A program made the translations under genes and the position numbers. 64,000 nucleotides of DNA from Isurus oxyrinchus (Eukaryota): NCBI GenBank assembly GCA_026770705.1, contig JANJGN010000052.1:3348001-3412000 (forward strand), in the 5' to 3' direction. Below the pieces are notes generated by a model, which had not been told where the DNA came from, searched no databases, and was given only the letters and a program-made list of their open reading frames with translations. How positions within the stretch are numbered: position 1 is the first letter of the stretch; the number at the start of each line of letters is the position of its first letter. Below are positions 2,602-7,187 of this stretch, one piece after another.

Positions 2602-2718
2602 CTAATATCTACAGCAGAGACCACAAGTCTCATTTGGTTCTCTCCAATTACAGCAGTTACAGCAGAATCTGCAGAGCTGCTGTCTGCCCATTCTCTTCTG
2701 GCGCTGCAGCAAGGAGCC
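2602..2718 (-). CDS. HAMP: Hepcidin exon 3: end of the propeptide, furin site RQKR and mature peptide MGRQQLCRFCCNCCNWREPNETCGLCCRY*
   Basis: Acceptor ctgcttttccag, then 117 nt translating GSLLQRQKR|MGRQQLCRFCCNCCNWREPNETCGLCCRY-TAG. Shows the hepcidin C-x2-CC-x-CC-xn-C-G-x-CC 8-Cys pattern after an R-x-K-R site. Confidence 0.93.
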   Translation of the reverse strand, partial: GSLLQRQKRMGRQQLCRFCCNCCNWREPNETCGLCCRY

Positions 2719-3186
2719 CTGGAAAAGCAGGAGGACAATAGGTGAGAACATTCCGGAAAGAAAGAAGGCATCATTTCAATCAGGCGCGTCATTGGAAGGA
2801 GGATGGCGCATTTCTATAGCGCCTTTCCCCTCCTCAGGATGGCCCAAAGTGTTCCACAGCTGAAGGAAGGACTTTTTCTGAAGTGAGCTCACCGCTGTAA
2901 TGTAGGAAACGCAGCAGGCAATTCACGCACAGCAAGATCCCACAAACAGAAATGTGATAATGGCCCCGATTTTCAGTTTTTTACCAATGTCAGTTGAGGG
3001 ATAAATGTTTGCCCCAGGAAAGCAGACATAACTGCATCCCATCCACCCCCCACCACCCCCTCCACACATACCCCCCAACTCCTGACGCACTTCATTTAAA
3101 TTGTGGCCATGGAATCCTCTACATCCATCTGAGAGGGCAGATGTTGTCTCAGTTTAACATCTCATCTGAAAGACAGCGCCTTCAAC

Positions 3187-3420
3187 AGTGCAGCACCCCC
3201 TCAGTACTTACCCTCCGACTGTGCAGCACTCCCTCAGTACTGACCGTCTGACAATGCAGCACCCCCTCAGTACTGACCCTCCGACTGTGCAGTCCCCCGC
3301 CGGTACTGACCCTCTGACAGTGCAGCACTCCAAGACTGACCGTCTGACAATGCAGCACCCCCTCAGTACTGACCCTCCGACTGTCCTGCCCCCCCGCCGG
3401 TACTGACCCTCCGACAGCTC
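3187..3420 (+). repeat. 33-bp satellite (CAGTGCAGCACTCCCTCAGTACTGACCCTCTGA), short array
   Basis: About 7 tandem units. Confidence 0.9.
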
Positions 3421-3694
3421 GGTAATTTCTCAATTACGCCTGGTGGTCCTTTTAACTCAGAGCTGAGAGTTGCAGAGAATCGAGCAGACACCCTGAACTG
3501 ACACTTGCAGTGCAAGTACTGGGAGCGCGCTGGTCATTATCATGCTGCTGTCTGTGGGATCTTACAGTGCGCCAATGGCTGATTCTTTTCCCACAGTACA
3601 TCAGTGACCTCACATGAAAGAAAAAAAGCACTTGATTGTTTGCGAAACAGTTTGGGACGTCCTGATGTGTTGGAAGGCGCTAGAGAAATGCAAG

Positions 3695-3843
3695 AGTCGA
3701 CGTTTCGAGTCCTCATGACCCTTCTGAGGACTCGAAACGTCAACTCTTTTCTTCTCCGCCGATGCTGCCAGACCTGCTGAGTTTTTTCAGGTAATTCTGT
3801 TTTTGTTTTGGATTTCCAGCATCCGCAGTTTTCTTTGTTTTTA
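3695..3843 (+). mobile_element. Short Penelope-like terminal-repeat insertion with inverted 5' end and 14-bp TSD
   Basis: Matches the 32555-32640 terminus; flanked by tagagaaatgcaag at 3681-3694 and 3844-3857. Confidence 0.75.
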
Positions 3844-5126
3844 TAGAGAAATGCAAGTCCTCTTTGTCTTTCACTCGATCCTCTAAGGTGTCTGTTGATT
3901 AACCAGCCTCTCGGTGTATGATGTAGGCCTGGTTATAAACAGTTAGAAGGATCAAATATCAAAAGTGCTTTGGCTGACAGTTAAACCGATTGTGCATTCG
4001 GAGAGATTAGATACGGTCTGCGCACAATGACTCCAGTCTCTGGCACTGACTGCCGCCTGGGGTCTCCCTTCCACATAACACTCACAACTTGCATTTACAC
4101 AGCGCCTCTGACATTGCAAAATGTCCCAGCCCACATTACCGGAGCGTAAATCAGAGAGAAGTCTAACACTGAGTCACATGTGGAGATATTAGGGATAGGT
4201 GACCAAAAGCTTGGTCAAAGATGTCAGTTTTTAAGGAGCGTCTTAAAGGAGAGAGAGAGAGAGAGGCAGAGAGGTTAAGGGAGGGTATTCCGGAGCTCAG
4301 GGCCCCAGGCAGCTGAAGGCATGGCCACCAATGGTGGAGCGATGGGAATCAGGGGGACCCGGGAGATGCAGTAATGTCAGAGATTTTGGAGGAACATCGG
4401 GACCGGAGGAGGTGTTCTCCTGCTCCATATCTCTCTCTCTCTTCCTCTCTTCCACTCCTCCTCTCCCTGTCTCTCTCTCTCCTACTCTTCCTCTCAATTG
4501 CCCTCTCTCCCAATCTTTCTCTCCTCTCTCCCTTTTCCTGTCTCTCTCCCTCTCTCTCTCCCTGTCTCATTCTCCCACTCTGTATCTCTCCCTCTCTCTC
4601 ACACTATTTTTGTACCTTTCGCTCACTCTGTAACTCTCCCTTTCCTGTTAATTTCTCCCTCTTGGACAATCACTCTTCTCTTTTCACTTTCCCTCACTCT
4701 GCATCTCTTTAATTTCTCCCTCTGTCACTCTCTCCCACCTATGTTCTTTCCCTTTCACCCCTCCCCGTCCCACTCTCTGTCTCTCTCTTCCAATCCCTCC
4801 CTCCCTCATTCCATCCCTCTCTCCGACTCTCGACTCCCAGCCTCTCTTTAACCCACTCCCAGGCTGGATCAATCTCCCTCTCACTATTCCCGGCGTGGGT
4901 TACATTTAAAATTCCTGTGGGGATATGTTCACTTCCTTGGAATTGCCTCTTCCCAGCTTTGCAAAAAAGTTGGGCGGGGGGGGGGGGGGGGGGGGCTCGA
5001 TTTCAAACATGCCTCCTGAGTATAACCGAGACAGACTGCCACTGAAATCAGCTTGAAATCAGAAAACTTTCTGTGGAAGAAACGAGCAGGGAGAAACCTT
5101 AAAATAAGGAATGAATTTCCACCTAC

Positions 5127-5183
5127 CATGTCCGGGGAATCCACAGATTTCTCAATCGTCGAAGAACCTAAAGCAGTGTCAAC
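5127..5183 (-). CDS. HAMP: Hepcidin exon 2 (propeptide VDTALGSSTIEKSVDSPDM)
   Basis: Strong acceptor ttctttttgcag and donor gtaggt; 57 nt, phase 0/0, in frame with exons 1 and 3. Size is close to the 60-nt middle exon of human HAMP. Confidence 0.8.
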
Positions 5184-5594
5184 CTGCAAAAAGAAAGAAT
5201 TTATCAGGGAGAAAGTGAGAGGAGGATTGAGGGAGAGGGAGAGAGAGAGAGAGAGAGTTACAGGAGAGAGAGGGGGAGGAGGACAGACTTGCATTTCTCT
5301 AACGCCTTTCACCACATCCCAAAGCATTTCACAGCCACTGAAGGATGTTTTTGAAGTGCACTCACACTGTCGGAAATGTGGCAGCTGATTTGTGCACAGC
5401 AAGATCCCACAAATAGCAATGTGATTGTGACCGAGATCATCTGCTTTTTAGTGATGTTGGTTGAGGGATAAATATTGGTCCCAGGACACGGGGAGAACTC
5501 CCCCTGCTCTTCCTCCAAATAGTGGCTGTGGGATCTTTCACACCCGCCCGAGAGGGCAGACGGGGGACTCGGTTTAATGTCTCATTCAACATTG

Positions 5595-5940
5595 TTGTGC
5601 TCCCTCAGTACTAACCCTTTGACACTGCAGCACTCCCTCAGTACTAACCCTTCGATAGTGCTGCACTCCCACAGTATTGTCCCTCCGTCAGTGCAGCGCT
5701 CCCTCAGTACTAACCCTTTGACACTGCAGCACTCCCTTAGTATTAACCCTTCGATAGTGCTGTGCTCCCTCAGTACTGTCCCTCCGTCAGTGCAGCTCTA
5801 TTTCAGTACTAACCCTTCGACACAGCAGCACTCCCTCAGTACTGACCTCCGACAGTATAGCACTCACTCAGTACTGTCCCTCCAATAGTGCAACACTTCC
5901 ACACTACTGACCCTCTGACAGTGCAGCACTCCCTCAGCAC
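5595..5940 (+). repeat. 33-bp satellite, degenerate array
   Basis: Tandem cagcactccctcagtact units. Confidence 0.85.
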
Positions 5941-6017
5941 GGAGTGTTGACCGACGTTATGGGACTGAATTCCGTGGAGTGAGACTCAGACCAGAGATTT
6001 AGGTAGGGTTGTTCCGG

Positions 6018-6895
6018 CTGGAGGAGGTTACAGAGATAGGGAGGGTTGTAGAGGCTGTAGGAGGTTACAGAGATAGGGAGGGTTCTAGAGGCTGTAGGAG
6101 GTTACAGAGATAGGGAGGGTTGTAGGGGCTGTAGGAGGTTACAGAGATAGGGAGGTGAGTAGGGGCTGTAGGAGGTTAAAGAGATGGGGGGGTTGTGGGG
6201 GCTGGAGGAGGTTACAGAGGTAGGGAGGGTTGTAGAGGCTGGAGGAGGTTACCAAAATAGATACTGTTGTAGGGGCCACAGTAGGTTACAGAGATAGGGA
6301 GAGTTATAGTGTGGAGAGGACGTTATAGAGTTCATGAGCATTGTAGGGGCTGGAGGAGGTGACAGTCATTCTGAGGGTCGTGGGGCCTGGAGGAGGTTAC
6401 AGAGATAGGGAGGGTTGTAGGGTCTGGAGGAGGTTACAGAGATAGGGAGGGTTGTAGGGTCTGGAGCAGGTTACAGAGATAGGGAGGGTTGTAGGGTCTA
6501 GAGGAGGTTACAGTGATCATGAGGGTTGTGGGGCCTGGGGGAGGTTACAGAGATAGGTAGGGTTGTAGGGGCTGGAGGAGGTTACAGAGATAGGGAGGTT
6601 TATAGGGGCTGGAGGAGGTTACGGTGATAGGGAGGGTTGTAGGGGCTGGAGGAGGTTACGGAGATAGGGAGTGTTGTAGGGTCTGGAGGAGGTAACAGAG
6701 ATAGGGACAGTTGTAGGGGCTGGAGGAGGTTACAGAGATAGGGAGGGTTGTAGGGGCTGGAGGAGGTTACAGAGATAGGGACGGTTGTAGGGGCTGGTGG
6801 AGGTTACAGAGATAGGGAGGGGTGTAGGGGCTGGAGGAGGTTACAGAGATAGGGAGGGTTGTACGGGCTGGAGGAGGTTACAGAGATAGGGAGTC
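6018..6895 (+). repeat. ~37-bp G-rich minisatellite (GGAGGAGGTTACAGAGATAGGGAGGGTTGTAGGGGCT) in HAMP intron 1
   Basis: More than 20 tandem units; inverted copy at 7635-7748 and degenerate copy at 60005-60620. Confidence 0.9.
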
Positions 6896-7094
6896 GCTGA
6901 GGAGGGATTGAAAGCAAGAATGAGAATTTCAGGGGAAACGACATAAGGAAATGATGTTAAATTCATAGAGGGCGACAATATTAAAGGCACGAACATAATA
7001 ATATCAAACTGCGGAAGTGACCAGTCTATCTGGGTGGTAGACGTAGAGTCATGTGCAAGAAACACCTCACCCAGAGGGACATCTCTTAGCTTAC

Positions 7095-7187
7095 CCTCGA
7101 CAAGGAGAAGAAGTGACTCAGCTGCAGGGAGAGCAGCAAAGTCAGAGTGAACAAGACAAGTCGCCATTTCATCTGGGAGCTTCCCAT
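7095..7187 (-). CDS. HAMP: Hepcidin exon 1 (signal peptide MGSSQMKWRLVLFTLTLLLSLQLSHFFSLSR); alternative in-frame ATG at 7172
   Basis: ATG in good Kozak context (gagATGG), hydrophobic signal core, donor gtaagc at 7094 in phase 0, TATA box about 75 nt upstream. Confidence 0.82.

What the first reader, a model, noticed from the sequence alone, without database searches (positions are those of the whole stretch)
2602..7187. Hidden three-exon hepcidin (HAMP) gene missed by the ORF track
Seen: three small minus-strand exons with good splice sites join in phase 0 to give MGSSQMKWRLVLFTLTLLLSLQLSHFFSLSR-VDTALGSSTIEKSVDSPDM-GSLLQRQKR|MGRQQLCRFCCNCCNWREPNETCGLCCRY (88 aa). Known: hepcidins are signal peptide + propeptide + RxK/RR furin site + 8-Cys peptide, encoded on three exons. 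Inference: this is a cartilaginous-fish hepcidin, small enough and buried in enough repeats to escape annotation. I cannot check whether it has already been described.
Basis: partly seen in the sequence, partly recalled or inferred. Interest (0 to 1): 0.95.

Follow-up and report, generated by a model that had tools for sequence, protein, structure and literature searches.

The report
Intact long-loop shark hepcidin gene copy
The three small exons are real and encode an intact member of the hepcidin family (the small cysteine-rich iron and defence peptide of vertebrates) beside Siglec immune-receptor genes, but it is an unusual-looking copy of a gene this scan has met many times in the same genome, not a new kind of gene.

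Summary
Observation confirmed. Three minus-strand exons (7187-7095, 5183-5127, 2718-2602) have canonical, top-ranking GT/AG sites and join in phase 0. Exon 3 alone passes Pfam's curated Hepcidin threshold (31.6 bits against 27). It shares the octapeptide CRFCCNCC and the CG.CCR tail with the solved bass hepcidin 1S6W. The model has a hydrophobic leader, an RQKR furin site, eight cysteines in the hepcidin register, a TATA box, and the window's only GGCGCC (BMP-type motif) about 215 nt upstream of the ATG. The gene lies next to Siglec/CD22/MAG-like exons, which echoes the human HAMP-MAG-CD22 linkage. Two features are atypical: the C5-C6 loop is 8 residues (4-5 usual) and carries an N-E-T sequon, and the N-terminus (MGRQQL) lacks the His-containing motif of iron-regulatory hepcidins. 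The scan found this before on other DNA: at least ten similar three-exon copies in the same genome, some broken. This copy is intact. The only evidence is indirect: eight small run assemblies hold the exon 3/UTR stretch. Database blanks are uninformative. Verdict: new member of a known family, most likely a lineage-expanded, diverged paralogue. Interest is moderate.

The parts
7095..7187 (-). Exon 1 coding part: start codon, basic n-region, 12-residue hydrophobic core, donor AGG|gtaagc at 7094
   Evidence: Kyte-Doolittle 11-residue maximum 2.51 at residues 10-21; donor rank 2 of 241
5127..5183 (-). Exon 2: 19 codons of acidic/polar propeptide, phase 0 on both sides
   Evidence: best of 320 open phase-0 candidates. 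No Pfam support of its own.
2602..2718 (-). Exon 3: end of the propeptide, RQKR furin-type site, 29-residue mature peptide with 8 Cys, stop codon at 2602-2604
   Evidence: Pfam Hepcidin, 31.6 bits against cut-off 27; alignment to 1S6W
5184..7094 (-). Intron 1, mostly tandem repeats: a 37-nt unit x 24 at 6000-6893 and a 33-nt unit x 10 at 5600-5937
2719..5126 (-). Intron 2: SINE-like and GA-rich low-complexity DNA.
7259..7264 (-). TATAAG box 72-77 nt upstream of the ATG. No upstream ATG lies between it and the start codon. The inferred 5' UTR is about 45 nt.
   Evidence: the transcription start is inferred, not shown
7401..7406 (.). GGCGCC (BMP-responsive-element core), directly followed on the gene strand by AGAC. 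It is the only GGCGCC in the whole window.
   Evidence: 1 match in 64 kb, 1.8 expected; its position about 215 nt upstream of the ATG is the notable point
7441..7448 (-). TTGCACAA, a C/EBP-type half-palindrome, one of two in the window
   Evidence: motif only
2300..2601 (-). Probable 3' UTR. There is no AATAAA or ATTAAA within 1 kb. The variant AATACA lies at 2325-2320 and is followed by a GT-rich tract.
   Evidence: Run assemblies X1-X4 hold 91-100% of sampled words of 2440-2720. The end is inferred.
9904..10311 (-). Nearest upstream neighbour: a Siglec-like V-set exon (context, not part of the gene)
   Evidence: sialoadhesin 7e-9, MAG 2e-7

Best explanation
This is an intact copy of a multi-copy, lineage-expanded 'long-loop' hepcidin gene of a shark-like genome. 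Shown: three phase-0 exons encode an 88-codon prepropeptide made of a hydrophobic leader, a short acidic propeptide, an RQKR proprotein-convertase site, and a 29-residue peptide. That peptide has eight cysteines in the hepcidin register: six residues before Cys1, the CRFCCNCC core, and two residues after the last Cys. Inferred: the gene is transcribed from a TATA promoter that carries BMP- and C/EBP-type motifs, the product is secreted, furin cuts it after RQKR (or after the overlapping RMGR), and it folds into the four-disulfide hairpin. The tip of that hairpin is four residues longer than usual and may be N-glycosylated at N-E-T. The N-terminus lacks the His3/hydrophobic-4 motif of ferroportin-binding hepcidins, and the gene is amplified together with Siglec genes. 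It therefore most likely acts like the teleost hamp2 type, a diverged defence or accessory peptide, and not as the animal's principal iron hormone.
For: The exons and splice sites are confirmed. Exon 3 scores above Pfam's Hepcidin gathering threshold. CRFCCNCC is identical, and the CG.CCR tail is shared, with the solved bass hepcidin 1S6W, a hamp2-type peptide. The cysteine motif is unique in the window. The leader is hydrophobic, and the mature peptide has 29 aa, 8 Cys and net charge +2. A TATA box, GGCGCC and TTGCACAA lie upstream. The Siglec/CD22/MAG-like neighbours match the HAMP-MAG-CD22 linkage known from human 19q13 (my own knowledge). Eight small run assemblies under two organism labels hold the exon 3/UTR words. 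The multi-copy status comes from earlier scan notes, which are leads, not independent evidence.
Against: The runs that hold it are not on record as RNA, and their words could come from sister copies. There is no canonical poly(A) signal. AlphaFold2 on the single sequence gave helices, not a hairpin, at modest confidence. A net charge of only +2 is low for an antimicrobial peptide. The BMP-type motif and the conserved register argue for, not against, an iron-hormone role.
Confidence: 0.5

Rival explanations
1. It is a working iron-regulatory hormone, a functional HAMP orthologue. It binds ferroportin despite the divergent N-terminus, and the long loop stays outside the transporter.
For: Its register matches human hepcidin-25 (six residues before Cys1, two after Cys8), with a hydrophobic residue at position 6 and Phe at position 9. 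The only GGCGCC of the window lies in its promoter, next to a C/EBP-type site. It is linked to Siglec genes. In the hepcidin-ferroportin structure the loop is 'highly variable' and largely extracellular (PMC8235187). The ferroportin Cys326 equivalent is already present in cartilaginous fish.
Against: The N-terminus is MGRQQL, without His3 or a hydrophobic/aromatic residue at position 4. The gene is multi-copy and some copies are broken. Earlier notes claim a second, more ordinary hepcidin type in the same animal (not tested here).
Confidence: 0.3
2. This particular copy is a silent duplicate or a young pseudogene. The open frame survives only because the duplication is recent, and the expression signal belongs to sister copies.
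For: Earlier notes describe sister copies with a broken first donor or a frameshift. There is no canonical AATAAA or ATTAAA. No copy-specific expression data exist.
Against: Every signal tested is intact here: ATG context, four splice sites, frame, stop, TATA box and promoter motifs.
Confidence: 0.14
3. It is a chance arrangement of cysteine-rich ORF fragments within repeats.
For: The window is full of CC-containing repeat translations. The only hit of the library search was such an artefact.
Against: The Pfam score is above the curated threshold at E = 2e-7. An octapeptide is identical to a solved hepcidin. The motif is unique in the window. The exons lie in unique DNA, and the splice sites rank at the top.
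Confidence: 0.01

Closest known systems
Human hepcidin-25 (HAMP, Pfam PF06446)
   Same: It shares the three-exon gene with the mature peptide on exon 3, the signal peptide + propeptide + polybasic furin site architecture, eight Cys with six residues before Cys1 and two after Cys8, an aromatic residue at position 9, a GGCGCC motif in the proximal promoter, and linkage to MAG/CD22-type Siglec genes. The human details are from my own knowledge.
   Different: The C5-C6 loop has 8 residues instead of 4 and carries an N-E-T sequon. The N-terminus is MGRQQL instead of DTHFPI, so there is no His3 (ATCUN) and no Phe4. The gene is many copies instead of one.
Teleost hamp2-type hepcidins, e.g. hybrid striped bass hepcidin (PDB 1S6W)
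   Same: The CRFCCNCC core is identical and the CG.CCR(F/Y) C-terminus matches. The N-terminus is non-canonical. Both belong to a lineage-specific multi-copy family; multiple HAMP genes in teleosts are described in PMC7067429.
   Different: The loop is longer (8 against 5 residues). There are six residues before Cys1. The net charge is lower. The amplification is together with Siglec genes in a cartilaginous-fish-like genome.
Nurse shark plasma hepcidin (PMC9207270)
   Same: It shows that a hepcidin protein circulates in a shark and that it was absent from another shark's annotated proteome. That is the same annotation problem.
   Different: No sequence was available to me, so identity of type (long-loop or ordinary) could not be compared.

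Membership tests
Hepcidin family (Pfam PF06446) | Profile-HMM score above the curated gathering threshold | tested here: met
   Exon 3 alone scores 31.6 bits against cut-off 27, E = 2e-7, profile positions 24-52 of 53
Hepcidin family (Pfam PF06446) | Eight cysteines in the order C-x2-CC-x-CC-loop-C-x2-CC | tested here: met
   the pattern occurs once in six frames of the window
Hepcidin family (Pfam PF06446) | Hairpin loop of 4-5 residues between Cys5 and Cys6 | tested here: not met
   The loop is 8 residues (NWREPNET). The alignment to 1S6W needs a 4-residue gap. This is a variant feature, not disqualifying, since the loop is the variable part (PMC8235187).
Hepcidin family (Pfam PF06446) | Prepropeptide: signal peptide, propeptide, RX(K/R)R convertase site just before the mature peptide | tested here: met
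   There is a hydrophobic core at residues 10-21 and an RQKR site seven residues before Cys1. No SignalP/ProP run was available.
Hepcidin family (Pfam PF06446) | Three-exon gene, mature peptide on exon 3 | tested here: met
   This is a model only; the junctions were not seen in RNA.
Hepcidin family (Pfam PF06446) | Beta-hairpin fold with four disulfides | tested here: inconclusive
   Single-sequence AlphaFold2 gave two helices, pLDDT 71, pTM 0.38. This is unreliable for disulfide-rich peptides.
Hepcidin family (Pfam PF06446) | Conserved linkage with MAG/CD22-type Siglec genes (USF2-HAMP-MAG-CD22 in human) | tested here: met
   V-set exons hit Pfam Ig_CD22 and the PDB entries for Siglec-5/7/8, MAG and sialoadhesin. 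USF2 was not seen in the window.
Hepcidin family (Pfam PF06446) | Transcribed and spliced as modelled | tested here: inconclusive
Eight small run assemblies hold the exon 3/UTR words, but none is on record as RNA.
Iron-regulatory hepcidin (HAMP/hamp1 type, ferroportin ligand) | N-terminal motif with His3 and a hydrophobic/aromatic residue at position 4 (DTHFPI, QSHLSL) | tested here: not met
   MGRQQL precedes Cys1. The reference motifs are from my own knowledge.
Iron-regulatory hepcidin (HAMP/hamp1 type, ferroportin ligand) | BMP/SMAD-responsive promoter | tested here: inconclusive
   The single GGCGCC of the window, followed by AGAC, lies about 215 nt upstream of the ATG. There is no TTCNNNGAA STAT site. 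This is a motif only.
Iron-regulatory hepcidin (HAMP/hamp1 type, ferroportin ligand) | Binds ferroportin at the Cys326 site and lowers iron export | not testable with these tools
A cell assay is needed.

The most novel reading that the evidence does not exclude
Long-loop hepcidins could be a shark-lineage innovation: a strongly expressed, possibly N-glycosylated hepcidin family, co-amplified with Siglec receptor genes and still under BMP-type control. Either they engage ferroportin in a way that does not need the classical N-terminal motif, or they have acquired a new target. Either case would revise how the hepcidin-ferroportin axis looked at the base of jawed vertebrates.
Probability: 0.12. 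Interest if true: 0.7.

Novelty: new member of a known kind. Interest (0 to 1): 0.35.

Why it matters
Hepcidin is the master iron hormone of vertebrates. Cartilaginous fish are the earliest lineage in which ferroportin carries the hepcidin-binding cysteine (PMC8235187). I found no open-access study that characterises a shark hepcidin, apart from a mention in a plasma proteome (PMC9207270). A catalogue of intact and broken copies of an expanded, structurally unusual hepcidin family would show whether the split into an iron-hormone type and a defence type arose independently in sharks and teleosts. It would also give testable peptides. For genome annotation, it is a reminder that 90-aa, three-exon peptide genes inside repeats are easily missed. 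This single copy adds one intact member to a family that the scan has already flagged repeatedly.

Tried and rejected
- **Word-indexed protein searches.** I queried the 49-aa ORF, the exon-2-bearing ORF and the 57-aa stop-free stretch 2605-2775. All came back with 'no candidate'. The index did not return even teleost hepcidins that share CRFCCNCC (shown), so these blanks say nothing about novelty.
- **Whole-library phmmer with exon 3.** The single hit, P0001, is a translated repeat, not a hepcidin. A 38-aa query cannot reach E <= 0.001 against 1.8 billion proteins unless the match is nearly identical.
- **ESM Atlas.** The best score was 0.76, to an unrelated plant cluster. This is uninformative.
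- **Read laying on 2400-7300.**
- **Joined 88-aa model.** I never sent it to a search or a fold.
- **AlphaFold2 of exon 3.** The model was helical and of modest confidence, so I ran no fold search on it.
- **Pfam on the exon-2 ORF.** Nothing was found. The propeptide is not conserved enough.
- **Second copy or pseudo-exon in the window.** None was found.
- **Literature and the supplement of PMC9207270.** I found no characterised shark hepcidin sequence.
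Full report
**What is in the sequence**

On the minus strand there are three short open pieces at exactly the stated coordinates.
- Exon 1 runs from 7187 to 7095. It has 31 codons, starts with ATG in a G..ATGG context, and ends at a donor AGG|gtaagc.
- Exon 2 runs from 5183 to 5127. It has 19 codons, follows a long pyrimidine tract and ttgcag|G, and ends at ATG|gtaggt.
- Exon 3 runs from 2718 to 2602. It has 38 codons plus TAG and follows ttttccag|G.
- All junctions are in phase 0.

I scored every GT and AG between exon 1 and exon 3 with approximate vertebrate splice matrices. 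The matrices were written from memory, so they serve for ranking only.
- The two acceptors rank 1 and 2 of 330.
- The two donors rank 2 and 4 of 241.
- The claimed exon 2 is by far the best of 320 open phase-0 internal-exon candidates, at 13.1 against 6.1.

The exons lie in unique DNA. The introns are mostly repeats: a 37-nt unit repeated 24 times and a 33-nt unit repeated 10 times in intron 1. No piece reaches the 60-aa default of the ORF list, which explains why the ORF track did not show the gene.

**Is it a hepcidin?**

Exon 3 alone scores 31.6 bits on Pfam Hepcidin (PF06446), above the curated cut-off of 27, with E = 2e-7. Against solved structures its only match is the hybrid striped bass hepcidin 1S6W. 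The octapeptide CRFCCNCC is identical, the CG.CCR tail is shared, and the alignment has a four-residue gap in the loop. The cysteine pattern occurs once in all six frames of the window.

Upstream of the cysteine core lies RQKR, a classical proprotein-convertase site. It overlaps a minimal RMGR site. Cleavage after RQKR leaves a 29-residue peptide with eight Cys and net charge +2. That peptide has six residues before Cys1 and two after the last Cys, which is the register I know from human hepcidin-25.

Exon 1 has a basic start and a 12-residue hydrophobic core, with a Kyte-Doolittle maximum of 2.51, followed by S-L-S. This fits a signal peptide, but no dedicated predictor was available. A chance origin is effectively excluded.

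**Promoter and 3' end (sequence-level, inferred)**

A TATAAG box lies 72-77 nt upstream of the ATG, with no intervening ATG. The only GGCGCC of the whole 64-kb window lies at 7401-7406, about 215 nt upstream of the ATG, and is followed directly by AGAC. The count is not enriched (1 found, 1.8 expected), but the chance that the single site falls within 500 nt of this ATG is under 1%. A TTGCACAA C/EBP-type site lies at 7448-7441. No TTCNNNGAA STAT site is present.

These motifs resemble the BMP- and C/EBP-dependent liver promoter of known hepcidin genes (my own knowledge). They are not evidence of function.

Downstream of the stop there is no AATAAA or ATTAAA within 1 kb. The variant AATACA lies at 2325-2320 and is followed by a GT-rich tract, which makes it the most plausible poly(A) configuration.

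**Context**

The same strand upstream carries Siglec-type exons.
- V-set exons lie at 9904-10311, 39116-39616, 41128-41517, 57805-58272 and 61762-62259.
- A C2-set exon lies at 38496-38810.
- Nine near-identical Ig exons lie between 25599 and 37943.
- Of the exons tested, the V-set exons at 39116-39616 and 61762-62259 pass Pfam V-set and Ig_CD22, the one at 9904-10311 matches V-set only weakly (below the cut-off), and the C2-set exon and one of the nine Ig exons match Ig-domain families.
- The two V-set exons searched against solved structures (9904-10311, 39116-39616) match Siglec-5/7/8, CD33, MAG, sialoadhesin and CD22.

In human, HAMP lies next to MAG and CD22 (my own knowledge), so the linkage supports orthology of the locus, although the order differs. 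Earlier notes place more Siglec-type domains just before the window start.

**What is unusual**

The loop between Cys5 and Cys6 has eight residues. It has four in human hepcidin and five in bass. It contains an N-E-T glycosylation sequon. The six residues before Cys1 are MGRQQL, without the His3 and the hydrophobic or aromatic position 4 of DTHFPI and QSHLSL. The hydrophobic position 6 and Phe9 are kept.

According to PMC8235187, the loop is the highly variable, largely extracellular part in the hepcidin-ferroportin complex, while the termini are buried. A long loop is therefore tolerable, but a changed N-terminus matters.

**Not a singleton**

The scan's own notes list at least ten similar three-exon hepcidin-like genes in the same genome. 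Two lie about 2.04-2.08 Mb upstream on the same piece, and the others lie on other pieces. Follow-up agents described them as strongly transcribed, long-loop and multi-copy. They reported some copies with a broken first donor or a frameshift, and possibly a second, more ordinary hepcidin type in the animal.

I treat these notes as leads. I could not test them, except to show that this window's copy has an intact donor, frame and stop. They changed my reading from 'the HAMP gene' to 'one intact copy of an expanded family'.

**Expression**

The look-up of sequencing runs shows that two sets of runs hold the sampled words of 2440-2720.
- Four runs of organism A (one sample, 58-115 million letters each) hold 91-100% of the words.
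- Four runs of organism B (four samples, 21-42 million letters each) hold 59%.
- Eight other organism-B runs hold none.

Such small data sets would rarely all contain a given locus of a large genome if they were shotgun DNA, so they are probably RNA or cDNA libraries from an expressing tissue. None is on record as RNA, the meaning of 'million letters' is not certain, and the words may come from sister copies.

**Is it already known?**

Three word-indexed searches were blank. They failed even to return teleost hepcidins that share CRFCCNCC, so they are uninformative. The whole-library phmmer gave only a translated-repeat artefact.

In the paper library I found no characterised shark hepcidin. 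The one relevant statement is that nurse shark plasma contains hepcidin with no orthologue in the whale shark proteome (PMC9207270). A review states that hepcidin has no known antecedent before fish and that the ferroportin Cys326 equivalent first appears in cartilaginous fish (PMC8235187).

I could neither confirm nor refute that.

The exons were handled apart, by reference.

**Verdict**

The most likely reading (0.5) is an intact, probably expressed copy of a lineage-expanded long-loop hepcidin family that works as a secreted, furin-processed, disulfide-rich peptide. It is functionally closer to the teleost hamp2 type than to the iron hormone.

The main rival (0.3) is that it is a working ferroportin ligand. 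The conserved register, Phe9 and the BMP-type promoter motif support that reading. A silent young duplicate (0.14) cannot be excluded for this particular copy.

It is a new member of a known family, with variant features, and was found repeatedly by this scan.

Noticed in passing
window 25599-37943 (-): Nine near-identical Ig (I-set/Ig_3) exons of about 94 aa, each in a roughly 1-kb unit with microsatellite-rich, partly N-masked spacers. They form a long stalk of a Siglec-like gene whose V-set and C2-set exons lie at 39616-38496.
   Followed up: partly
window 39116-39616 and 41128-41517 (-); also 57805-58272 and 61762-62259 (-): These are duplicated Siglec V-set exons with the YFFRIEF arginine motif. 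The copy at 41128-41517 lacks the N-terminal part of its twin. At least two or three Siglec genes lie in the window.
   Followed up: partly
window 9904-10311 (-): This is the V-set exon closest to the hepcidin promoter. Its best solved relatives are sialoadhesin and MAG, but it ends in VYCTQF (canonical Ig Y-x-C) in place of the Siglec FFR arginine motif.
   Followed up: no
window 19275-23877 and 51372-52465: These are kilobase-long satellites of a 33-nt unit, also present in both hepcidin introns. They stay open in several frames and give spurious ORFs of up to 1171 aa. The only library hit of the hepcidin exon (P0001) was a similar translated-repeat artefact in the public protein collection.
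   Followed up: partly
window 30524-31291 (-), 31780-32109 (+), 17231-17653 (-): These are mobile-element fragments. Two pieces are GIY-YIG-type (Penelope-like), in opposite orientation, inside the Siglec stalk array. A third piece is a reverse-transcriptase fragment. Both Pfam hits are just under the cut-offs.
   Followed up: partly
window 6000-6893 and 7640-7748: The 37-nt tandem repeat of intron 1 recurs in inverted orientation just upstream of the promoter, so exon 1 and its promoter are bracketed by inverted arrays of the same repeat.
   Followed up: no
window 7971-8583: An 84-nt tandem array between the hepcidin promoter and the next gene stays open in four frames and gives ORFs of 126-176 aa.
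   Followed up: no
tool behaviour: the search for homologous proteins returned 'no candidate' for a query containing CRFCCNCC, an octapeptide present in a solved teleost hepcidin. Its blanks on short cysteine-rich peptides should not be read as novelty.
   Followed up: partly
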